DNA of 63,778 nucleotides, counting the filler, from Perkinsus chesapeaki ATCC PRA-425 (taxonomy: Eukaryota; Protista; Perkinsozoa): assembly GCA_013115145.1 (NCBI GenBank). It is 5 parts of 5 records of this genome, joined end to end, with 100 filler letters (N's around TTAATTAATTAA, not from the genome) between each part and the next. Parts side by side here need not be neighbours in the genome. Positions count along the whole stretch, not along the records: positions 16,717 to 47,984 come from JAAPAO010000422.1; 4 more parts are not named here. One strand, given 5' to 3'. Of the stretch, positions 8,090-47,983 are shown piece after piece (position 1 is the stretch's first letter; the number at the start of each line of letters is the position of its first letter). The translations under genes were made by a program, and so were the position numbers. The notes under the pieces are model-generated. The model was not told the origin of the DNA, searched no databases, and worked only from the letters and a program-made list of their open reading frames with translations.

Positions 8090-8470
8090 CCGGAGAAGAT
8101 TAAGCATGCGAAGCCTCACAAAGTTGCATTGCATGTGGGTGGGGATCGGCACCATATCTGAAGGAGTTTGGAGATTGAAGGGCAGATTGCTAGCTACCTC
8201 CGTGATTGGCGAAACAATCGCCGTCCATACTGGGGGACGAGCCTCTGGATCGAGCCCTACCTAAAATAAATCGCGGAAAAGTTAATAGTGATGAAAATAG
8301 TGATGCCAACGCAAATAGTGATGAGAATGCCTACTTTCGTCGAAGACAGTTGCCACAGTGGAGCTGGTTGATGACGACACACTTACACAAGAACTGGTGT
8401 CGTCTTGTGGAAGTTGGCTCTCTGAAAAAAAACATACTTTTCAACGGCGAACAGCAGTCTTACTGAAAGC
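8090..8470 (+). mobile_element. Possible decayed pogo/Tc5-type transposase DNA-binding region
   Basis: Broken translation LEIEGQIASYLRDWRNNRRP...LVSSCGSWLSEKKHTFQRRT resembles the CENP-B/Tc5 HTH pattern; stops and frameshifts. Confidence 0.3.
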
Positions 8471-19280: not shown

Positions 19281-21372
19281 TCATTTCTCAGTACGTGCTC
19301 GCACCGGCCGACTCGACAACGGAGGGCTTAGAAAACGTATTTGCCCCAGTTCGTCATAATCGTCATCGTCATCATCGCCCAATGCCGACAGCGACCCTCG
19401 CCGAAGCGCCGGGGCTGCCGGCATTGTAACAATATTCGCGCTGGCAGTCCGGACTCGATTGGCGAGCCAAAGCTTGCGCGGAGTTATACAGTATTCAACA
19501 AAGTTGCGCATAATCAGAGCTAGCTTCGCGGGCTGCTCCTCCTCCACCTGAAAACGTGCACTAAGACGTTGATCAAAACTACACAGAATTTCGACCGTAG
19601 ATTCATCGCAGACAATAAGCTTTGCTATTACGTGAAGAGACCAGCATAAAAGCAATCGAACGTTGTGAAGTTTACAATTAAGGTAACCATTCGCTCAACC
19701 AAAGACTGCAGTCCCCCCTCACCGGGACCGCAAAAGCACGAAGTTTCCTCACTAGTTATTTGCCCACATACCTACATCGGTCGTCGTATCCAACACTTCC
19801 ATCCCTCACCACACCCCCGATTATTACCAGATGTCCGCACCTCGGCACCACTTCCCACCGCACATCGCAGCGTTTGGACAACAGATGGGTGAAGAACCTC
19901 TGATACTCCCTCTTCGGCACTACCTTATCATGATCACCAGTCAACAATAGTATAGGGCACGACGGCAAGTTCTGTGGTATCTTCCAGTGTACATTAGTAC
20001 GCTGCTTATTCATCTCAACTATCGCAGCATCCCAACCCTCCAACCTGGTAGGGGTGCGATAGTCCTCCTTCAACCACTCAGGTATCTTGTTGCTCCTGTA
20101 CCATGATTTCTTCATCATAAAGTCTGCCACCTCCGACCGGAGCATCGACAATGATAGAGCTCGACTGACGTTACTGGTGAGTATAGACCTTATCACCCCA
20201 GGAAGGCCCATTCCCGTTGTCACCGTCGGTGAAATCAGGACCACGCCGGTCACCGAACCCGTGTTCCGCGCAGCCGACTCCAAAGCCAGTAAAGCCCCGG
20301 CACCAACACCCACGAGGATCTGCGGCAAGCTGTCAGCGGTGTACCGCTGGAACAGCTCCACTGTCTCCCGGGCAAAGGCGACCGAGTACGGCGGCAAGAG
20401 CACAGGACGACCATCTGGGCCCATTATGTGGACTGCCGCCGCAGGATCTTTCGGTCTCTCTGTAAAGCCATGAGCAGGTCGATCGAAGCACGTGACGTTG
20501 GCATTGCATTCGTCTACCAGCAAAGGAACCGCTCGCTTCCAAGTGAAACAGCCACCACCGAATTGGTGTATTAGTAGAAGGTTGACAACAGGTGTAGTGG
20601 AGCGAGCTGTTTGGTAGTAACAAAGTATGCCACCAGCAGTGTCACGGTAAGGCCAGTCCATTTCGTTATAGTCCATACCGGTTGCAGTGCAAAGGTAGTG
20701 GGCATCTGGACCGTGGGCGAAGACACGGTGCGACGAGTCCGATACACCCGAAGACGCCTTGGAACCAACCTCTAGATCACCTTCGCTGTCACCACTGCTG
20801 AACAGGGATATTTCTTCAGGTCGATCAGGAGCAAGTAAAGGGGCCTCCAGGTCTGCATTGTTGGGTCTATGATGACGATGTCGATGTCGACGATGGGCGA
20901 AAGGGAACCGAGATGTCAGTCGGAAGTTGGCATTGAACCGCCATAGCTTTCTTTGCCTCACCCTGTCAGAGTGCTTCAGAAAGAAAACGCCTTCGAGCAC
21001 GCAAAGTACCACAATTGTGACGGTTTCGGCGGGCATCTTCTCGGAGGTCATATAGAGCCACAGTGAGTATATTATTGACCCAACAACGGTCGCCGATACC
21101 ACTATGTCAGGTACAAGAGAGGTTTTGCGACGGTATTGAAAGGCAATATTAATGAGAATAAAGCGACCAACGAACACACTTACGTATTCGTAGAGAGTCA
21201 CAGGATGATCACGGTACTTGTTCTCGAAGTCGCCGAGAGATGACAGACAGACAATCAAATCAAGCAAGGTAAGTATACGCGGAATCCGAGATTTAAGCAG
21301 GAAAAGCAAGCAGTTCACAGCAAACTTCAGGGCGAATAACCATTCCAACGCCTTAGATGAAGCCTCGGCCAT
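19281..21372 (-). CDS. Membrane-anchored alpha/beta-hydrolase-fold protein (exons 21372-19828 and 19547-19281; about 603 aa)
   Basis: N-terminal hydrophobic helices; LLIHQFGGG, CFDRPAHGFTERP, LLTGDHDKVVP, spliced CGHL/VEEEQPAKL. Confidence 0.85.
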
Positions 21373-21493
21373 TTTTACAGTATCATGGGCCGTATCCGAG
21401 GTTGATCCGGGGATTTCAAAAAAGCGCGCGCCATTGTGATCGATTATCTACCTTGGCGACCAATTTCTAAAGTACGTTGTTGCTTCTTCTTAT

Positions 21494-22984
21494 ATGACCG
21501 AGCCTGTAGTGAATCAAAGTGGATCCTCCACTGGCTCCGTCACCAGCCCCGAGGTGAATCCTCCAAACTGCGAAGGCGGAAAGTCGATATCGCTCACACT
21601 TACAGACGAGGACGATACCATCAGATTGGGGCAGCAAATCGCCAGTGTTTTGCGACCGGGATTGACGGTTCTGTTGAAGGGGAATCTCGGTGCTGGAAAG
21701 ACTTGTTTGGCTCGGGCATTGCTGCGGCATGTGATGCAAAAGGAGACATTAGAGGTGCCTAGTCCGAGCTATTTGATTAGCTTTACGTATGTTGTTGAAG
21801 ATGATAATGGACTTTTGACCAAAGGCTCGAAGGTAGTAGACGGGGAATGAGATAATGTAGAACTACTTATCAATAATTATATTATTGGTATGTGGGCTGA
21901 AGGATATGAGCCATATTAGCTAGTTGACAACTCCGTATTAATGTTGAAGATCCGTTCAAAAGTGTACCCAAATATGAGCTGCTCAGAAATATTCACCTTA
22001 TTTGCAATAATGAATTTACACCAATGCGATTGATTAGTGCGTCTATGGCTACTCTAAAAGTTTGCAACATACTTATTAAATTTTCCGACGAGTAGCGTGT
22101 GAAAAAATAACAGAGTGTCAAGGTGATATGGAAAGCTCTTTGAGTGCAATAGAAAGTTATGAAACCTCCGAGACACCTTGTTGAAGTGTTAAACAAAATT
22201 GCGCTGAGGTTACTTCACGTAGCAGTCTCGAGTCCGATGAACTATGGTGAAATAGTGGTAGACTTGGTCCAAGCGGCTCGGTGGTGACGTATCAAACTGA
22301 CCAAATGGTACATAAGCTAATAACCCGTCGGCCTTGAATCGATTCATTCAAAGAGCCATGCATTTCAGAAATATCCTGTGTTATCCGTCTCAGGTACACC
22401 ATCTCGATCCCTATAGACTTGCCTCTGGTAAAGTAGCTGCTCTATTCGACTTTGACACTGCCTTCAAGGAGGATGTTACTATTATAGAGTGGCCAGAACG
22501 ATTGGGTAGTGTGGGAGGGTGATGTCCTTCTTTGATAGAGACTGAATAAATTAATCAAAAGGTTGAGATATTAAAAGGATGCCGATTATGGATTAAAAGT
22601 ATAAATCGGGTGAAGTGGATACGATAAGGGAAGCGCTCACTAGCCTTATATTCAATATGAGCCTCCTTGAGTTTTTTCGCGGCATTTTTGTGCGAAAAAT
22701 GGACTTTCCGTACCCCAGGATCGAACCTGCGCCGATGTCTTCATTTAGGGTCCAACGTCATTCCGCCCAGCGATTCCTCCTTAACAGTCTACTTCAGCGG
22801 TGTTGGTCCACAGGCAGTGGGGCGGCATGTTACTCTGAGCTGTAGTGATGATGCCCACTACTGGTCGGCTGTACTGAAAGAATGGCCACCTAAGCTCCGA
22901 TTGGGGAAGCCACGGGAGAGCACTGATGGACTGGACCAGGAGGAGAAAGCGGGAAATACGGTATTAAGGGACAGGGGGGACTAG
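21494..22984 (+). CDS. tsaE: TsaE/YjeE t6A-biosynthesis P-loop ATPase module (exons 21494-21832, 22394-22505, 22749-22960 or -22984)
   Basis: Walker A GNLGAGKT, VPSPSY, VHHLDPYRL, IIEWPERLG and C-terminal GRHVTL; phase-matched GT-AG introns. Confidence 0.92.
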
Positions 22985-23377
22985 TGGAGATCTCGGGCGG
23001 CATTAGAGGCTCATTGTTATTAACTTCTTTCATTTCATTTTGCGGGCATAGGTGCGCTTGCTTGTATATAGCTTTATATATAAGCTTTGTGTTTGTGTGT
23101 AGTGAGATTGACACTTGTTTTATGTATAAAAAATGGAGATATTCGAAATAGCGTTTAGTGATATCTGAATACTAGAGGCCGCCGAAGCAATAAAGTAGAA
23201 TAATTCCTACTCTTTATTTCTCACTCGACATCAAGTGTTGTAGCTTGGAATTCGAAACATGAGTACTACTGAAGTCAGATTCGAAAACATGGCACTAAAT
23301 CGATCAACGGTTTAATACATATCTTTATGCTGGCGCTATCTAGCATTATTATTAATCACTCACCGCTCTGCGTTCAG

Positions 23378-24955
23378 ATTGAGGACCCGAAGTCAGGAGG
23401 GCAATTCCTTCCGCCACTGCCGAGCGATAAGTCTAAGTGGTTGGTGCTGGGAATAGAATCGTCGTGTGATGATACAGCAGCGGCAGTAGTTGATATTAAT
23501 GGCAATATTAAAGGGGAGGCTATAGCCAGTCAGGCAGGTTAGTATACGGTTTTAGCATGGGGAAGGGCGTGGGTTCGAATCCTGCACATATCATTTTAGA
23601 AATCCACAGCCAATACGGTGGTGTAGTCCCCAAGTTGGCACAGGAAGCCCATGCCTCTGCGATCGAAAAGACTGTCAAACTTGCTCTCTCTCGAGCTGAT
23701 ATCGACTTCAAAGATTTAACAGCAGTTGGCGTGACAGTCGGGCCTGGACTGGCATTGTGCTTGCAGGTAAGGTTACTTGGAGATTAGTCATCATGCGACT
23801 GGGTGATGAGCGATTCAACGTTGGGGGAGGTTCGTGAGTATCACAGCTGTTGGCTGTTTTGGTACAGACTTTCGACACTGTGCTCTACTTGGTAGCAACC
23901 GTAGGATCCTTCGGTGGCTAATACGCTCCCAATAGAGGAGAAGATTTTTTCAAATTCCCGAGTTCGGGTTTGCTCTAGGAGCATCAACTGGTGTGTGTAT
24001 TTAGGTTGGCGTTAAAAGTGCCATAGAGCTCACAGCCAAATACGACTTACCGTTGGTACGAACCCATCATATGGAATCTCATATGCTGGTCACAAGGAAG
24101 CCTGACCCGTCTGCCCCGACTGCTGCCTTACCGGCTCCTGAGTTCCCATTTGTCACACTGCTCGTATCTGGTGGCCACAACATGGCCGTGCTTACTAGGG
24201 GATTGGGGGACCATGTCATCTTGGGCTCGACTTTGGACGACTCTGTGGGAGAGTGCTTCGATAAGGTTGCTCGTCTGTTGGATATCAACGATGTTCCCGG
24301 AGGGCCGGTTTTGGAAAAAATGGCGAACGATGGGAATCCTAGAGCGTGCCTGAGGGAGCTGGCGAAGCCTCTGGCAAAGACACGGGACCCTGAATTGAAG
24401 AACGGTTGCGACTTTTCGTTCGCCGGGCTGAAGACTTCAATGAGACAGCTGATAGAGGGAGGGAAATACAGCAAAGCCGATATGGCGGCAACCTTTCAAA
24501 AGCGAGCTGTTGACCATCTGGTGGAGCGTGCGGGTCGGGCAATCGATTGGGCCCTTGACATCGAAACCGACATTAAGGACTTGGTTGTTGCTGGTGGAGT
24601 GGCGGCTAATAAGACGGTTCGATCGAGGATGCAGGAGCTTGCTAAGGAGAAAGGTCTTGTGTTGCATTGTCCCCCTACTCGGTTGTGTACGGATAATGGC
24701 ACGATGGTGGCCTGGAACGCTATAGAGCATCTTAAAAAGGGACTGTACGAGAGAGCACCATGTAGCGCTGAATCGGCTGATAAGTTCGTGGAGGTCCGAC
24801 CACGGTGGCCGCTGGGACCGAGGGATGCGCGATGCAAAGGACGAGATAACGCTGAGGGAGGGAGGAAGGCGAGGAAGAGACCGCAGCCGGAGGCACCGTC
24901 AGATGAGGATATTAGAGAGGCTAAACGTGTAGCTGCTGAAGTTAGGATATCCTAA
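23378..24955 (+). CDS. tsaD: TsaD/Qri7/OSGEPL1-type tRNA N6-threonylcarbamoyltransferase (exons 23378-23537, 23600-23766, 24005-24955)
   Basis: LGIESSCDDTAAAVV, YGGVVPKLAQEAH, GPGLALCLQVG, HHMESH, LLVSGGH, GECFDKVARLL, FSFAGLKT, VAGGVAAN, CTDNGTMVAW. Confidence 0.96.
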
Positions 24956-25148
24956 AGACTGTCAAGTTTCCATTTACGAATGATTGATTGGAGTTGTTGT
25001 TGTGTTGGAGTTGTGGGTGACGGTAGACTGGTAGTGGATGACGTGCCTGAGTGAATGGGACCATTGATTATTACACTAAATAGCACTTCTTACATTCGTG
25101 AATCAACTAATGTTTGGAGGTACCTCGATTGGTGGGGTAAATGCGATG

Positions 25149-25402
25149 AAGAGCTGCACTAATACGAGATGACAGTTTAGGCCAAGAGCTGCACTAATAC
25201 GAGATGACAGTTTAGGCCAAGAGCTGCACTAATACGAGATGACAATTTAGGCCAAGAGCTGCACTAATACGAGATGACAATTTAGGCCAAGAGCTGCACT
25301 AATACGAGATGACAGTTTAGGCCAAGAGCAGCACTAATACGAGATGACAGTTTAGGCCAAGAGCTGCACTAATACGAGATGACAATTTAGGCCAAGAGCT
25401 GC
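25149..25402. repeat. 35-bp minisatellite, 7 full copies plus a partial
   Basis: aagagctgcactaatacgagatgaca(g/a)tttaggcc at 25149, 25184 ... 25359; no spacers. Confidence 0.97.
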
Positions 25403-26197: not shown

Positions 26198-26953
26198 GGC
26201 CCTGCTGCCCATTATTCCCCACAGTAGAAGGATAAGCCTGTACGGCTAAGTCGGGCCCTGCTGCCCTTTATTCCCCACAATAGAGGGATAAGCTTGTACG
26301 GCTAAGTCGGGCCATGCTGCCCTTTATTCCCCACAGTAGAGGGATAAGCTTGTACGGCTAAGTCGGGCCCTGCTGCCCTTTATTCCCCACAGTAGAGGGA
26401 TAAGCCTGTACGGCTAAGTCGGGCCATGCTGCCCTTTATTCCCCACAGTAGAGGGATAAGCCTGTACGGCTAATTCGGGCCATGCTGCCCTTTATTCCCC
26501 ACAGTAGAGGGGTAAGCCTGTACGGCTAAGTCGGGCCATGCTGCCCTTTATTCCCCACAGTAGAGGGATAAGCCTGTACGGCTAAGTNNNNNNNNNNNNN
26601 NNNNNNNNNNNNNNNNNNNNNNNNNNNNNNNNNNNNNNNNNNNNNNNNNNNNNNNNNNNNNNNNNNNNNNNNNNNNNNNNNNNNNTTTATTCCCCACAGT
26701 AGAGGGATAAGCCTGTACGGCTAAGNNNNNNNNNNNNNNNNNNNNNNNNNNNNNNNNNNNNNNNNNNNNNNNNNNNNNNNNNNNNNNNNNNNNNNNNNNN
26801 NNNNNNNNNNNNNNNNNNNNNNNAGTCGGGCCATGCTGCCCTTTATTCCCCACAGTAGGGGGATAAGCCTGTACGGCTAAGTCGGGCCATGCTGCCCTTT
26901 ATTCCCCACAGTAGGGGGATAAGCCTGTACGGCTAAGTCGGGCCATGCTGCCC
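26198..26953. repeat. 56-bp minisatellite with two internal N gaps (26588-26685, 26726-26823)
   Basis: acagtagagggataagcctgtacggctaagtcgggccatgctgccctttattcccc; period 56 (26221, 26277, 26333 ...). Confidence 0.97.
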
Positions 26954-43654: not shown

Positions 43655-46600
43655 TTATACAACAGCGGAGAAACAGAAAACATCAGGGCAATGAAACACC
43701 TGTGGATTCACTGAATAGTCTAACTCACTCATGAAAGTATCTTCCCTGAAAGGAAGTAGTTGCTCAATTGATACATAATTTTGCTTCCCATAAAGCTTAT
43801 AAAGATATCTATTTACAGGATGGATAGCCTGTATAACAAATGGCCCTTGTATCACTCTCTTTTGATTGATTCGCCTGACAAGACGGACTTTATCTCCTAC
43901 ATGGAAAAGAAACCTAGGAGATCTAGACAGTATCTCTCGTATTTCAGCATTAGCAGCTCGTTCGTCTCTTTGTTGGCGATACTGGATATACCGGTCTTCA
44001 ATAGTTTTTGCCACTCCAGATGGCAAAATATCACCCTCTATGTCTAAACCCATTGTTAGAGCATGTGGGGAGTAGCCACTTCCAACTAAATTTGATTGGT
44101 TATGTATTAATCCACTTAGAAGACCAGATATATACCATGGGCTAGATACCGGTGTCGCTAGGTTCGCCGTAACAGTCTCTTTTACTGATCTTATTGCACC
44201 TTCAACCAACCCTTGGGTTTGTGGTCGTCTAGCAACGCCATATAGTAACTCGATGTTCCAATTTTTCGCAAAAATAGTCAATTCATCACTAACATGAGCA
44301 CCTGCTTGATCCAATTGAATGAAGCTCGGAATATTATACACCTGGAACCAGACAAGTAAACCCATTATCAGATCCAATGCTGAGGTACTATGTGTCGGTA
44401 GGACTAACATAGCCCGTGTGCCTTCATCTACCATTACCAGAAGATGATGAAGCTCACCAGGACAATGGACATCTGCTGGTTTATAATAAGCTTCCATTGA
44501 TCCAGTAAAGTCCACTTGGATAGTATTAAAACGACCCATCCCTCTTCTAAATACCAATGGTTGAGGATTGTAAGGTTCGTATGTTTTTCCCAACTGACAT
44601 TGTTGGCATCCTTTTATCCATTTAGTTAGATCTTTAACCATTGACGGCCACCAGAAACCATTTTTCTGAGTACTTTGGATGGTGCGAGGCGTCCCACGGT
44701 GCACACCAGTTTGCACATTTATATGGTACTTGTACAAGGCCCATGCTCTACTGCGCTTAGTTGGAAGGTAAGCTAACCATGGAGTCTTACGTTGTAAGTC
44801 TCTGTAAAATAGGAGGCCTTCTTCTAGTTTAAACCGATTGCCTGACTTTGCTCCACCAAAGCAAAGTCTCTGTATATCTTCTTCATACGGTTGACCACGA
44901 TGTAGAGCTTCTACTACCTTCTCTAAGCATATCCCATAGAGCTTGTGATTTTTAGTGAATACCGCATCACTGAGAGCTTTTCTGCAGTGCTCTAGTATAT
45001 CGTCAGTAGATACTTCTGAAACATTGGTAAGGGACTCGTACTCAATCTTTCTATCACCATTTTCCTCATTTTCAATAACCGACGTCGCAACCATAGATAT
45101 TCCATTATAGGATTCAATATTAATATCAGGCTGGTAGCGTCTGCTAGCTTGCGGGGCCGAAGTATATGTACAAATGAGAGAATCGGTAAACGCAATACAC
45201 GATAGCGCTTCCTTATTCTTCTTCGTAGGAGCCTTTCCCTTCATTAGCGAAGGAGTTTTCTGAAGGCCATCTAGTTTCGGGTATTGAGCACCCTTTCTAG
45301 ATAAGTTATCAGCAGCCGAGTTGAGTACACCAGGAAGATACTTAACACTGATATCAAGGTTATACTCTTTCTTAGAGTAAAACAGAAGCTCCTTCGCTTC
45401 ATCGTGCATTCTATGCACGGCTTGAATATCATACCTCCTGTTTAATGAACTCGTGCTCCACGAGGTAGCGGTAGTATTATCACAGAAAAGAGAAACACCT
45501 CTTAGTCTAGTACCAGATTTACCAAACTTCTGAAGCCATGACAATAAGAACCTAAGGGTTTTTAATAGCCACAGGAACTCTTTTCTGTTTACATGCCACT
45601 TTTCCTCTTTCTCGTTAAAGGTACTTGAATGTGCCTCTAATAAGACAGTATCAGGGTCACCAGGCCTCCCTGACTCGGAAGGCGATGAAATAATGCAACA
45701 GCCGCCTCCGACCTCACAGGCATCACAAAAACCTAGCAAATAATGATGATTCATTGGAATTGCAAGGTGACTACAACCAGAGAAATCTGCGACAGCATCG
45801 CTCACCATTTTCTGGACAGCTGACATAGTATCAGCTGATATATCATATTTCACGTCCCATCCACCCGTGGCTTTTCCTGACCACGCTCGCAGCAAATCCG
45901 CAACCAGTCGGGATGTTGCATGGCAATACAAAGGATCGTAAAATTGACCACAAACTGAAAAGATTAATCTCTTACAGACTTTCAGCGGCACAACTGTTTT
46001 TTCGCAATCAATAAGGGGACATTCCAAAGAAAGCTCATTCTCTAAGGACAATTTCCACCAAAGCCCTAAGTGGAAAGCTTTCGACCCTCTCGCAAGATGA
46101 GTCTTCTTCTTCTCGGGTATTTCTACCCCGAGAGAAGGCGCTATTCTACATAGAATATTCTCAAAAGTGTCTACGAGCTTCTTTGTGCCAATGACAAAGA
46201 AGTCGTCGTAGTAAGGGATTATCATTAATCCCGGCACTACGTCTATTAATCTAGACGTACAAGTAGCTTCAACTTCCCGGCCTAGCATTGCCGATAGCAC
46301 TGCATTACAGAGCACCAAAACTTGCGAAGCAAGACCACAAGGACCATATCTTACTCCAAAAATAACTCTGTCACATAAAAACTTCTTTCCAATAGATTTG
46401 ATAAGTACATGCTTCTTATGTGCTAAACGCACTTTATAAAAAGCACGTGATAGATCTAATACTGTCAACGTAGAGTTGTCACTATTCCATCCAGCCCTAG
46501 CAAACTTCACAATATCGTCAATAGCCCAGCCAGAGTAACTGGCTGTTTCCACACGGCCATTGAAGAGTCTGGCGTCACTGCAGGCTCTAATTTTCGTACT

Positions 46601-47983
46601 AGCCGACTTTTGGCATAATGGAAAAGTCACTATTTCTAGTGGGGACAGAACTCCTTGATCAGAGTTTAACTGCTTAGTAGACCACCACTGTTTAGTAGTA
46701 AACTCCTTTATAATCTTCTGGTACTCTGTCCTTGCTTCATCAGATAAGCTATTATATAAGCCAACGCTATAATCATATACGTTATTATTAGTCTCAGATA
46801 TACCATCTTTAATAGCAACATCTATCTCTACTACAAGTGATTGTTCAGGTGTATCTTTAACTTCTCCAGGTAGTAGTCTCCTTAATCTATACTTATAATC
46901 TTCCCCACCAGGGCACTTTTTCCATACACCAATCTGACTAGTAAGATACTCTTCCGCCGCCCTGACTTGATCATCCAGGCAAGCATCTAGGCCTCCTTTA
47001 TTTCCCTTTATTTGAGGAGGGAGGACTACACGGACACCTATGTCGTTAAGTTGGGAGAAACCTACTATAATGTCTGTCTGAGGGATTTCTCGGACAAGCA
47101 AGAAATTTAGAATCGGACAATAACCAGCATAGCTTAATCGCGCTTGTACAAACTCAGTTGTTTCTAGTACTTGCCCATTTGCCACTGTGATGTAAGCAGG
47201 TGCATCAAGTTGCTTTCGCTTCAAGTGTAACCTGTCACTAGCATCTACTTGCCTCATATTATGAGTGGAGTAGGTATCCAGACCCACTCTAAGTGGCAGG
47301 GATATTCCTGAATTATCTACAGGAGATACATTCGCAAGCACTATGAGCACCCTCTCATTTACTCCAACTGTGGACGCAAGACTTATTCCATAAACGGAAC
47401 TCTCACTATTATGCTCACTCGGCCCAACACGGGACTTATTGTCCGTCGGGCCTTTTTTACCACCTCCATTCTTGGGGCACTGAGCTATTCTATGAGATGT
47501 AGCACCACATTTAAGACATAAACCAGCTTGCCTTCTTTCTTGTAAGATATCGCTAGGAACACCTAGCTTTTGTGATAGAGTAGGCTCTTTAGAAGACTTA
47601 GAAGGCGGGGTTGTAGAATCAACATTAGGCTTAGTACTCCTACTTTGTGGTGATTGTGCTTGATCGTAGAAAGACTTCCCATACTTGAACGAACGATGAT
47701 GATGTCCAGTCTTCTGATACTTAGGACGTGGAATAACCGCATCTTTATCATCATCCTGTCTGTGAGTTTTTCCATTACTATTAGTAACAGGAGTCGATAC
47801 ATTTGATGATCTAGGCTTCTCTTTCTTCGTATAATCAAACCTTTCCAAACCAAAATACTCATCAATAGTACTTGTACCATTTGCAGATACAAATCTTTGT
47901 ACCAAGTCCATACAGGATGTATCAGAAGTTGCCTCCTTTTCAATTTTCATAGCCAACTCATTGACTCCTACATTTCCGGCCAC
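43655..47983 (-). mobile_element. LTR retrotransposon with uninterrupted Gag-Pol (at least 1442 aa, 5'-truncated by contig end), BEL/Pao-like pol
   Basis: CCHC knuckle CLKCGATSHRIAQC, PR LDTYS, RT LDLSRAF/RVIFG/YYDD, KRLIFSVCGQFYDPL...GGWD, RNase H GFCDA/HVNRKE/CDN/NSAADNLSR, IN HHCC plus VDFTG/LDQAG/VEGAIR, GDKV...GPF. Confidence 0.92.

What the first reader, a model, noticed from the sequence alone, without database searches (positions are those of the whole stretch)
21494..24955. Predicted TsaE-TsaD fusion: a single-chain t6A enzyme in a eukaryote
Seen: an intron-containing TsaE lies directly upstream of TsaD on the same strand and contig. A phase-0 donor (ACG/GTATTA, 22961) and a phase-0 acceptor (TTCAG/ATT, 23377) join them in frame through an acidic linker of about 40 aa, giving exons 21494-21832, 22394-22505, 22749-22960, 23378-23537, 23600-23766, 24005-24955 = 1941 nt, 646 aa. 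There is no Met between the acceptor and the conserved LGIESSCDD. Established: bacteria make t6A with TsaC plus separate TsaB, TsaD and TsaE, where TsaE ATPase resets TsaD for turnover; eukaryotic cytosol uses KEOPS; mitochondrial Qri7/OSGEPL1 works as a homodimer without TsaB or TsaE. The TsaD here has plant GCP1/Qri7-like motifs (GPGLxLCLxVG, HHMExH). Inference: a hybrid system in which a homodimeric TsaD carries its own resetting ATPase. Alternative: two adjacent genes (tsaE stop at 22984, tsaD ATG at 23327), which would still be an unusual pathway cluster in a eukaryote.
Basis: partly seen in the sequence, partly recalled or inferred. Interest (0 to 1): 0.85.

Follow-up and report, generated by a model that had tools for sequence, protein, structure and literature searches.

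The report
TsaE–TsaD fusion gene in Perkinsus
This oyster-parasite (Perkinsus) gene almost certainly encodes one protein that joins the bacterial-type helper ATPase TsaE to the tRNA-modifying enzyme TsaD; the same fusion is widespread in algae and their relatives and sits unremarked in databases, although reviews of this tRNA modification say eukaryotes have no TsaE.

Summary
Six GT..AG exons (21494-24955, +) give a 1941-nt, 646-aa frame. Exons 1-3 encode a complete TsaE and exons 4-6 a complete TsaD, joined by a linker of about 45 aa.

No RNA reads were available, so the 22960/23378 junction rests on comparative evidence:
- Single-ORF TsaE-TsaD proteins collinear with this model occur in dinoflagellate transcriptomes, Vitrella, Chromera, Amoebophrya, haptophytes, chlorophytes, Euglena longa and in P. 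olseni annotations.
- Three other Perkinsus genomic sequences (P. olseni twice, plus one unnamed lineage) keep the donor, the acceptor and phase 0. All three lack any in-frame ATG before exon 4.
- Synonymous sites between species are saturated, yet both domains and the stretch just after the acceptor are conserved.

In trees, the fused TsaD and fused TsaE domains each form one clade. The TsaD lies in the eukaryotic Qri7/GCP1 group, next to alphaproteobacteria among the bacteria sampled.

The gene is therefore a member of a common, database-visible fusion family. I found no paper describing that family, and Thiaville et al. state that TsaE has no eukaryotic homologue. "Single-chain t6A enzyme" overstates it, because TC-AMP synthesis still needs Sua5/YrdC. 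Localisation, TsaB dependence and the cis-reset mechanism are untested. Interest is moderate.

The parts
21494..21832 (+). Exon 1. Holds the start codon, an N-terminal extension of about 27 aa rich in S/T/P, and the N-terminal half of TsaE, including Walker A GNLGAGKT (21680-21703) and SPSY (21761-21772).
   Evidence: frame, donor AAG|gtagta. (PF02367, 53 bits). (motifs against E. coli TsaE). (block conserved with P. olseni).
21833..22393 (+). Intron 1, 561 nt. The equivalent intron in P. olseni is only about 42 nt.
22394..22505 (+). Exon 2. Middle of TsaE, with HHLDPYRL (22397-22420) and the start of EWPERLG.
   Evidence: PF02367, profile positions 69-104. (conserved block 22392-22509)..
22506..22748 (+). 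Intron 2, 243 nt.
22749..22960 (+). Exon 3. Encodes the C-terminal beta-hairpin and helix of TsaE (GVGPQAVGR, W..W, up to about 22885), then the first 25 aa of the linker. Ends at the phase-0 donor ACG|gtattaagg.
   Evidence: aligns to the C-terminus of E. coli TsaE. (collinear with fused homologues). (donor conserved as GTAYTRMGG in three other Perkinsus sequences).
22961..23377 (+). Intron 3, the junction intron, 417 nt. If it were retained, the frame would stop at 22984. It contains the non-conserved in-frame ATG at 23327.
   Evidence: no DNA similarity to P. olseni here. (introns of 548 and 486 nt in other Perkinsus, both with in-frame stops and no ATG upstream of exon 4).
23378..23537 (+). 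Exon 4. Holds the last 21 aa of the linker (IEDPKSGGQFLPPLPSDKSKW) and the N-terminus of TsaD (LGIESSCDD, 23447-23473).
   Evidence: (pN 0.18 against pS 0.99 in the linker part; pN 0.035 in the TsaD part).
23538..23599 (+). Intron 4, 62 nt, with a TCGAATC heptamer conserved in four Perkinsus sequences.
23600..23766 (+). Exon 5. TsaD segment including GPGLALCL.
   Evidence: PF00814, 60.5 bits..
23767..24004 (+). Intron 5, 238 nt.
24005..24955 (+). Exon 6. Holds the rest of TsaD (HHMESH 24065-24082, SGGH, GGVAAN, CTDNGT, RPRWPLG), a 45-aa charged C-terminal tail (RKARKRP, 24863-24883) and the TAA stop.
   Evidence: PF00814, 162.5 bits. (E. coli TsaD, 1.5e-45). (89% identity to P. olseni)..
21373..21493 (.). 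A 121-bp gap between the TsaE-TsaD start codon and the start of the divergent alpha/beta-hydrolase gene (19756-21372, minus strand). It leaves no room for an upstream coding exon.
   Evidence: The same neighbour and orientation occur in P. olseni.

Best explanation
Positions 21494-24955 (+) form one six-exon nuclear gene of a Perkinsus species. It encodes a 646-aa protein with four parts: a complete bacterial-type TsaE P-loop ATPase (about residues 37-196), a flexible linker of about 45 aa, a complete TsaD/Qri7-type threonylcarbamoyl transferase (about residues 243-601), and a 45-aa charged tail. It is the Perkinsus orthologue of a fusion family that arose once within the eukaryotic, alphaproteobacteria-related TsaD lineage. 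That family is now found in Myzozoa, haptophytes, some chlorophytes and Euglena. Shown here: the gene structure, the domain identities, conservation of the catalytic and nucleotide-binding motifs, purifying selection on both halves, and the single origin of the fusion. Inferred: the TsaD part transfers the threonylcarbamoyl group from TC-AMP, made by a separate Sua5/YrdC, to A37 of ANN-decoding tRNAs. Also inferred: the tethered TsaE binds ATP at the TsaE-TsaD interface and, by hydrolysis, releases and resets TsaD for further turnovers, as in bacterial TsaBDE, with the tether replacing diffusion-limited rebinding. A second TsaD protomer probably takes the place of TsaB, as in the Qri7 homodimer. 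Where in the cell it acts is open.
For: Gene model. Collinearity: the model aligns end to end with full-length single-ORF proteins from intron-free transcript assemblies (MMETSP 'type:complete' ORFs, Polykrikos, Euglena longa) and from genome annotations (Vitrella, Symbiodinium 'GCP1', Prymnesium, Amoebophrya, P. olseni P0184/P0278/P0277). Junction: donor and acceptor positions and phase 0 are conserved in P. olseni (two assemblies) and in a third Perkinsus lineage (L084). Intron lengths are 417, 548 and 486 nt. The introns are unalignable, and in the other lineages there is no in-frame ATG between the last stop and exon 4. The first Met after the junction is residue 353, inside HHMESH. Selection: pS is 0.75-0.99 (saturated). 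pN is 0.035-0.16 in the TsaE and TsaD exons and 0.18 in the 21 codons just after the acceptor. Motifs: Walker A, SPSY, HxDxYRL and EWPE in TsaE, and GIESSCDD, HHMExH, SGGH, GGVAAN and CTDNG in TsaD, all align with E. coli. Fold, tested on homologue P0183: pLDDT 85, TsaE 1-176, disordered 178-200, TsaD 205-590. TM-score 0.87-0.91 to E. coli/Salmonella TsaD and 0.76-0.79 to T. maritima TsaE, B. subtilis YdiB and HI0065. Phylogeny: fused TsaDs form one clade (98/97) inside a eukaryotic clade (100/100) that is sister to alphaproteobacteria (99/96). Fused TsaEs form one clade (SH-aLRT 96). The roles of TsaE and the mutual exclusivity of TsaE and tRNA binding come from PMC9654439.
Against: There is no transcript evidence for this species. 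Only two small RNA runs were listed, and nothing from them laid on the locus. The window does hold an in-frame ATG at 23327, and a stop eight codons into the intron, so two separate products are formally possible here. P. olseni gene models are inconsistent between assemblies: split, fused to the downstream gene, or with an exon skipped. They are therefore weak support on their own. TsaB, Sua5/YrdC and KEOPS genes could not be looked for in this genome. There is no recognisable N-terminal targeting peptide, so the 'mitochondrial' label that NCBI gives the P. olseni orthologues is unverified. As far as I know, myzozoan mitochondria encode no tRNAs, so the substrate is unclear. The structure was predicted for a homologue about 45-50% identical, not for this protein, and inter-domain docking could not be read from the output.
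Confidence: 0.85

Rival explanations
1. There are two adjacent, separately translated genes. TsaE would end at the stop at 22984, with no splicing at 22960. TsaD would start at the ATG at 23327.
For: Both signals exist in the window. One P. olseni assembly was annotated with the locus split into two models, although the split lies inside TsaD and not at this junction.
Against: The ATG at 23327 and the 17 codons after it have no counterpart in P. olseni or L084. In both of those, an in-frame stop precedes exon 4 with no ATG after it. DNA and protein conservation begins only at the acceptor. Homologues from at least five lineages are single ORFs in spliced transcripts. The fused TsaE and TsaD trees are congruent, each showing one clade.
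Confidence: 0.06
2. The fusion mRNA is the main product, but retention of intron 3 also yields a free TsaE of about 229 aa (stop at 22984). The cell would then have both tethered and free TsaE.
For: In all Perkinsus sequences examined, read-through of the donor meets a stop within 7-9 codons. That would give a tidy TsaE-only product. Standalone TsaE proteins exist in other eukaryotes.
Against: There are no RNA data either way. The short read-through peptides are only partly conserved (all begin VLR). An early stop in a retained intron is expected by chance and would usually trigger decay.
Confidence: 0.1
3. The protein is real and fused, but it is not a mitochondrial t6A enzyme. It would act in the cytosol or nucleus, or in the relic plastid, or it would have a moonlighting role such as organelle genome maintenance, as reported for Qri7/Kae1 homologues.
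For: Most complete fused ORFs start 31-46 aa before Walker A, against 34 in E. coli, so they have no room for a presequence. The extra 27 aa or so in Perkinsus are acidic and S/T/P-rich. A K/R-rich C-terminal tail is present. For Plasmodium, mitochondria are said to use imported, already modified cytosolic tRNAs (PMC4615747). Euglena longa has a long N-terminal extension with a hydrophobic stretch, which suggests a different targeting there.
Against: All catalytic motifs for threonylcarbamoyl transfer are intact. The TsaD is phylogenetically of the mitochondrial type. No localisation data or predictor were available.
Confidence: 0.3

Closest known systems
Bacterial TsaB-TsaD-TsaE (TsaBDE) threonylcarbamoyl-transfer complex (e.g. 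T. maritima 6N9A/6S84; E. coli TsaBD 4YDU)
   Same: Both catalytic components are present with their signature motifs and folds. The TsaE ATPase is expected to bind at the TsaD interface and reset it (PMC9654439).
   Different: Here TsaE and TsaD are one polypeptide, in the order TsaE then TsaD. The organism is a eukaryote. No TsaB was identified, though it was not searchable here. The TsaD belongs to the eukaryotic Qri7/GCP1 clade, not to a bacterial one.
Mitochondrial Qri7 / OSGEPL1 / plant GCP1
   Same: The TsaD half falls in the same eukaryotic clade, sister to alphaproteobacteria among the bacteria sampled. The fold matches Qri7, with TM-score 0.76-0.80.
   Different: Qri7 is described as working alone as a homodimer, whereas this protein carries a TsaE domain. 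The fused TsaDs are a separate subclade (98/97) from the unfused plant, chlorophyte, diatom and cryptophyte proteins. No N-terminal presequence is evident. By sequence the TsaD part is closer to E. coli TsaD (1.5e-45) than to yeast Qri7 (8e-26).
Archaeal Kae1-Bud32 fusion (M. jannaschii MJ1130, 2VWB/3EN9; H. volcanii HVO_1895)
   Same: It is a natural fusion of the catalytic Kae1/TsaD-family subunit with the ATPase that switches it. Bud32 is treated as the functional analogue of TsaE (PMC10275265; PMC9654439). It appears among the fold hits.
   Different: The ATPase is unrelated (an RIO-type kinase fold against a P-loop). The domain order is reversed (Kae1 first). It works within KEOPS, together with Pcc1 and Cgi121.
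Database orthologues: P. olseni KAF4667526.1 (P0278) and the fused model P0184 ('putative tRNA N6-adenosine threonylcarbamoyltransferase, mitochondrial'), Symbiodinium 'GCP1', the Vitrella brassicaformis UniProt entry, Prymnesium parvum AB1Y20_000482
   Same: They have the same TsaE-linker-TsaD architecture and are collinear with this model. The P. olseni proteins are about 77% identical overall and 87-89% identical in TsaD.
   Different: None has been studied, and their names ignore the TsaE half. The P. olseni models carry errors: a retained intron, a skipped segment, or read-through into the next gene. P. marinus ATCC 50983 has only fragments of 298 and 203 aa.
HIT-TsaE-TsaD triple fusions (Chromera velia Cvel_6572; Volvox, Gonium, Haematococcus and Astrephomene 'Glycoprotease 1')
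   Same: They share the TsaE-TsaD core and fall in the same clade in both trees.
   Different: They carry an extra N-terminal histidine-triad nucleotide hydrolase domain and are 930-1080 aa long. That domain is absent from the Perkinsus gene.

Membership tests
TsaE (YjeE, Pfam PF02367, COG0802) | A profile match above the curated threshold. | tested here: met
   Exon 1 scores 53 bits and exon 2 scores 27.4 bits, against a cut-off of 26.6. A profile of the fused TsaE parts hits T. maritima, B. subtilis and H. influenzae TsaE in the PDB at 1e-13 to 7e-12.
TsaE (YjeE, Pfam PF02367, COG0802) | Walker A GxxGxGKT, together with the family motifs SPT(F/Y), HxDxYRL and EW. | tested here: met
   GNLGAGKT, SPSY, HHLDPYRL and EWPERLG align column for column with E. 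coli TsaE. They are invariant across 15 fused homologues.
TsaE (YjeE, Pfam PF02367, COG0802) | A complete P-loop fold, including the C-terminal hairpin. | tested here: met
   Exon 3 aligns to the C-terminus of E. coli TsaE. The AF2 model of homologue P0183 has TsaE at residues 1-176 with TM-score 0.76-0.79 to solved TsaE structures. This was tested on a homologue, not on this protein itself.
TsaE (YjeE, Pfam PF02367, COG0802) | ATPase activity that is stimulated by TsaD (and TsaB). | not testable with these tools
   This needs biochemistry.
TsaD/Kae1/Qri7 (Pfam PF00814, COG0533) | A profile match, together with the metal-binding HHxxxH and the downstream Asp (CTDNG). | tested here: met
   PF00814 scores 60.5 and 162.5 bits. 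HHMESH and CTDNGT align with E. coli H111/H115/D300 (residue numbers from memory; the alignment is). The PDB match to E. coli TsaD is 1.5e-45.
Eukaryotic organellar TsaD (Qri7/OSGEPL1/GCP1 clade) | Phylogenetic placement with eukaryotic Qri7/GCP1-type proteins. | tested here: met
   The eukaryotic clade has 100/100 support and is sister to alphaproteobacteria at 99/96. Caveats: no cyanobacteria and no opisthokont Qri7 were in the tree. The bacterial sample was biased by the search patterns.
Eukaryotic organellar TsaD (Qri7/OSGEPL1/GCP1 clade) | An N-terminal mitochondrial presequence, or demonstrated mitochondrial location. | tested here: inconclusive
   The first 36 residues have 1 K/R and 3 D/E and are rich in S/T/P. 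Most fused homologues have no extension at all. No predictor or localisation data were available.
Eukaryotic organellar TsaD (Qri7/OSGEPL1/GCP1 clade) | Works alone as a homodimer, without accessory subunits. | tested here: not met
   The protein carries a conserved and selectively maintained TsaE domain. That argues against a stand-alone mode. Dimerisation itself was not testable.
Bacterial-type TsaBDE system | Presence of a TsaB (YeaZ) partner. | not tested
   Only this window of the genome is available. No TsaB-like ORF was seen among the larger ORFs of 16717-47984.
Eukaryotic TsaE-TsaD fusion family (database-level, unnamed) | A single ORF with TsaE N-terminal to TsaD, and orthology of both halves. 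| tested here: met
   The model is collinear with the homologues. In one search, 75 of 90 hits carry both Pfam domains. The fused TsaD forms a clade at 98/97 and the fused TsaE a clade at 96.
Eukaryotic TsaE-TsaD fusion family (database-level, unnamed) | A mature mRNA in this organism that joins exon 3 to exon 4. | tested here: inconclusive
   No listed RNA run holds the locus, and no reads or contigs laid on it. The support is comparative only.

The most novel reading that the evidence does not exclude
Eukaryotes have a third, so far undescribed t6A transferase module besides KEOPS and stand-alone Qri7. It is a TsaD of alphaproteobacterial descent that kept its TsaE ATPase. The TsaE is free in many algae, and fused in cis in Myzozoa, haptophytes, some green algae and euglenids. 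The module would work without TsaB. Because most fused forms lack a presequence, and because myzozoan mitochondria have no tRNA genes, it may act on imported or cytosolic tRNAs or have a non-canonical role.
Probability: 0.35. Interest if true: 0.7.

Novelty: new variant of a known kind. Interest (0 to 1): 0.5.

Why it matters
The accepted picture has three systems: bacterial TsaBDE, archaeal and eukaryotic KEOPS, and a minimal mitochondrial Qri7. It is accompanied by the explicit statement that TsaE and TsaB have no homologues in Eukarya (PMC4615747).

A conserved and selectively maintained TsaE, fused to a mitochondrial-type TsaD in many protist and algal lineages, shows that statement is incomplete. 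So does the apparently free TsaE found in other algae. Together they suggest the ancestral organellar system was not minimal.

The fusion is also a natural single-chain construct for studying the TsaE reset cycle. It parallels the archaeal Kae1-Bud32 fusion.

In Perkinsus and other Myzozoa, which as far as I know have no organellar tRNA genes in the mitochondrion, it raises a testable question about which tRNAs are the substrate.

For this particular window the value is modest. It supplies a clean gene model for a locus that is fragmentary or mis-modelled in the published Perkinsus annotations.

Tried and rejected
- **This genome's own annotated protein.** None appeared in any search. The nearest are P. 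olseni and P. marinus at 77-89% identity.
- **Literature.** Six searches and four papers gave no description of a eukaryotic TsaE or of a TsaE-TsaD fusion. One further call failed on syntax. The 2026 P. marinus mitochondrial complexome paper does not mention TsaD, t6A or tRNA in its text.
- **tRNA-like element in intron 4.** I suspected one because of the GGGTTCGAATCCTGC 15-mer. ARAGORN and Rfam found nothing, and the 15-mer occurs only once. Only a 7-mer is conserved.
- **Origin of the TsaD.** The one genome-contig scan used the patterns GIESSCDD and HHME[AG]H. That biases it towards alphaproteobacteria, Bacteroidales and Acinetobacter and excludes cyanobacteria. A plastid origin is therefore not formally excluded.
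- **Naming the standalone TsaE clusters.** This yielded almost no organism labels. Their eukaryotic nature rests on Atlas taxon tags and on one MMETSP member.
- **Structure.** The window's spliced protein has no reference form, so the homologue P0183 was folded instead. Inter-domain docking cannot be judged from the returned data.
- **Pseudogene reading.** Rejected, because pN is far below pS.
Full report
**What is in the sequence.** Every intron is GT..AG.
- Pfam places TsaE (PF02367) on exons 1 and 2 and TsaD (PF00814) on exons 5 and 6.
- Exon 3 has no Pfam hit. In an alignment with E. coli TsaE it supplies the last beta-hairpin and C-terminal helix (window GVGPQAVGR...W..W against E. coli QAQGREARV...). 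TsaE is therefore complete only if exons 1-3 are spliced as proposed.
- E. coli TsaD begins MRVLGIETSCDE, and the window's TsaD domain begins at KWLVLGIESSCDD in exon 4. What lies between residues 197 and 242 is a linker with no counterpart in bacteria. Its charge is about neutral (7 K/R, 8 D/E), not acidic.
- The window comes from a Perkinsus species. Its TsaD part is 87-89% identical to both the P. olseni and the P. marinus proteins.

**Is the junction real?** No direct transcript evidence could be obtained. Two small runs with the species label were listed, neither held the locus, and nothing laid on it. The case is comparative, and I consider it strong for four reasons.
1. Full-length proteins with TsaE, linker and TsaD in one ORF, collinear with this model, come from spliced transcript assemblies: MMETSP dinoflagellates marked 'type:complete', Polykrikos and Euglena longa. 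They also come from genome annotations of Symbiodinium ('GCP1'), Vitrella, Chromera, Amoebophrya, Prymnesium, Chrysochromulina, Volvox, Gonium, Haematococcus and Tetradesmus. P. olseni itself has annotated models that cross the same junction (P0184, P0278, P0277).
2. Against the P. olseni genomic locus L001, DNA similarity exists only in five blocks whose edges match the proposed exons: 21307-21836, 22392-22509, 22747-22914, 23396-23771 and 24003-24971.
3. The junction intron is 417 nt here, 548 nt in P. olseni and 486 nt in a third Perkinsus lineage, the Logan contig L084. In all of them the donor reads GTAYTRMGG after a phase-0 codon and the acceptor is a phase-0 YAG. Read-through hits a stop within 7-9 codons. 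In the three other sequences (P. olseni twice, and L084) the in-frame stretch upstream of exon 4 holds no ATG. The ATG at 23327 is peculiar to this window. The first Met downstream of the junction is residue 353, inside the metal-binding HHMESH, so a separately translated TsaD is not viable.
4. Synonymous sites between the window and P. olseni are saturated (pS 0.75-0.99). Yet pN is only 0.035-0.16 in the TsaE and TsaD exons and 0.18 in the 21 linker codons just after the acceptor. That stretch is therefore translated in this frame, although it has no start codon of its own.

**What family it belongs to.**
- In the search with the TsaE-plus-linker part of a dinoflagellate homologue, 75 of 90 hits carry both Pfam domains.
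- A profile of the fused TsaE part, run against 1.84 billion representatives, gave 61 clusters at E<=1e-30. At least 15 of the best 150 are 450-1006 aa long, which means fusions.
- A careful ML tree of TsaD domains puts all eukaryotic sequences in one clade (100/100), sister to the sampled alphaproteobacteria (99/96). Within it, all fused TsaDs form one clade (98/97), apart from the unfused plant, green-algal, diatom and cryptophyte proteins. The window groups with three environmental fused proteins (98/94).
- A quick tree of TsaE domains likewise gives one fused clade (SH-aLRT 96). It is nested among many 180-340-aa standalone TsaE proteins with N-terminal extensions. The ESM Atlas tags such clusters as Eukaryota, with Chlorophyta and Bacillariophyta commonest, and one cluster has an MMETSP member.
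- The two halves therefore share one history: a single fusion event, possibly spread further among algae.
- Caveats: the bacterial sample was chosen by motif patterns and holds no cyanobacteria, and the TsaE tree is short (158 columns) and was built quickly.

**How it probably works.** Both halves keep their functional motifs.
- TsaE has Walker A GNLGAGKT, SPSY, HHLDPYRL and EWPERLG.
- TsaD has GIESSCDD, HHMESH, SGGH, GGVAAN and CTDNGT.
- An AlphaFold model of the closest clean full-length homologue, P0183, has mean pLDDT 85 and pTM 0.74. It shows a folded TsaE (1-176), a disordered linker (178-200) and a folded TsaD (205-590).
- Foldseek matches the TsaD part to E. coli and Salmonella TsaD (TM-score 0.87-0.91). 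It matches the TsaE part to T. maritima TsaE, B. subtilis YdiB and H. influenzae HI0065 (0.74-0.79).

In bacteria, TsaE binds at the TsaD-TsaB interface with ATP between TsaE and TsaD. It competes with tRNA for that site, and its ATP hydrolysis resets TsaD for the next turnover (PMC9654439). My inference is that the fused protein does the same with a tethered TsaE, and that a second TsaD protomer takes the place of TsaB, as in the Qri7 homodimer. This is inferred, not shown. TC-AMP must still come from a separate Sua5/YrdC, so the protein is not a complete single-chain t6A enzyme.

**Where it acts is open.** NCBI calls the P. olseni orthologues 'mitochondrial' by homology. However, most complete fused ORFs begin 31-46 residues before Walker A, against 34 in E. 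coli, which leaves no room for a presequence. The Perkinsus N-terminus has about 27 extra residues that are S/T/P-rich and net acidic. Euglena longa has a long extension with a hydrophobic stretch. A K/R-rich C-terminal tail is common to the family. Thiaville et al. note that Plasmodium mitochondria use imported, already modified tRNAs. As far as I know the same holds for other Myzozoa, so the substrate is a real question.

**Comparison with what is known.** The closest systems are bacterial TsaBDE (same parts, but separate chains plus TsaB), mitochondrial Qri7/OSGEPL1/GCP1 (same TsaD lineage, but no TsaE), and the archaeal Kae1-Bud32 fusion (same logic of catalytic subunit fused to its ATPase switch, but an unrelated ATPase and the reverse order).

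In the literature I could search, nothing describes a eukaryotic TsaE or a TsaE-TsaD fusion. Thiaville et al. 2014 state that TsaE and TsaB have no homologues in Eukarya or Archaea. The proteins are nevertheless in NCBI, UniProt and EukProt with both domains detectable. The architecture is therefore known at database level and unknown at paper level.

**Verdict.**
- The fusion interpretation is well supported, at about 0.85-0.9, short of RNA proof.
- The claim of rarity is not supported.
- The mechanistic 'hybrid' idea is reasonable but untested.
- I rate it a new variant of a known kind, of moderate interest. It is more interesting as a family-wide observation about eukaryotic t6A machinery than as a feature of this window.

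Noticed in passing
window 25149-25402; 26198-26587; 26824-26953: Tandem repeats lie just downstream of the gene's stop codon. One has a 35-nt unit in 7.3 copies (97% matches). Another has a 56-nt unit in 7 copies, with a further 2.3 copies about 240 nt beyond it. Their function is unknown, and P. olseni was not checked for them.
   Followed up: no
window 43655-47983 (-): A 1442-aa ORF runs into the edge of the piece and carries an integrase H2C2 zinc-binding domain (PF17921, 1.2e-10). It is probably the pol of an LTR (Ty3/gypsy-like) retroelement.
   Followed up: partly
window 19756-21372 (-): An intronless 538-aa alpha/beta-hydrolase gene is transcribed divergently, with its start only 121 bp from the TsaE-TsaD start codon. 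The same neighbour and orientation occur in both P. olseni assemblies, with an aldose epimerase gene beyond it. This suggests a shared bidirectional promoter.
   Followed up: partly
window 23538-23599 (intron 4); L001, L085, L084 equivalents: The 62-nt intron 4 holds the tRNA T-arm-like 15-mer GGGTTCGAATCCTGC. Its core TCGAATC is invariant in four Perkinsus sequences, although synonymous sites are saturated. ARAGORN and Rfam find no RNA gene. It may be a branch-site region or a small intronic element.
   Followed up: partly
P0282 (Chromera velia), P0219/P0223/P0222/P0220 (Volvox, Gonium, Haematococcus, Astrephomene): These are triple fusions, HIT-TsaE-TsaD, of 930-1080 aa. A histidine-triad nucleotide hydrolase joined to a pathway that runs through an acyl-adenylate (TC-AMP) hints at proofreading or AMP-derivative hydrolysis. 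I found no description of this.
   Followed up: partly
P0300-P0420 (representative search): There is a large set of 180-340-aa standalone TsaE proteins with N-terminal extensions. It is sister to the fused TsaE clade, and the ESM Atlas tags such clusters as eukaryotic (Chlorophyta, Bacillariophyta). This suggests that free organellar TsaE is widespread in algae, contrary to the review literature.
   Followed up: partly
L001 about 8360-8460; P0184, P0275, P0278, P0005: The P. olseni gene models for this locus are inconsistent. In L001, exon 6 matches only as pieces in different frames. Across the models there is a retained intron 5, a skipped part of exon 3, and read-through into the downstream gene. 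P. marinus ATCC 50983 has only fragments on contigs of about 1.2 kb.
   Followed up: partly
P0011 (UniProt K1P1Q4, Magallana gigas): The oyster 'TsaD' of 490 aa nests inside the haptophyte part of the fused clade, next to an environmental fused protein (100/99). It starts just before GIESSCDD. It is probably an algal contaminant or a truncated model rather than the oyster's own OSGEPL1.
   Followed up: partly
window 21833-22393 and 22506-22748, against L001 and L084: Intron sizes differ greatly between Perkinsus lineages at conserved positions. Intron 1 is 561 nt here against about 42 nt in P. olseni. Intron 2 is 243 nt here against about 40 nt in L084.
   Followed up: no
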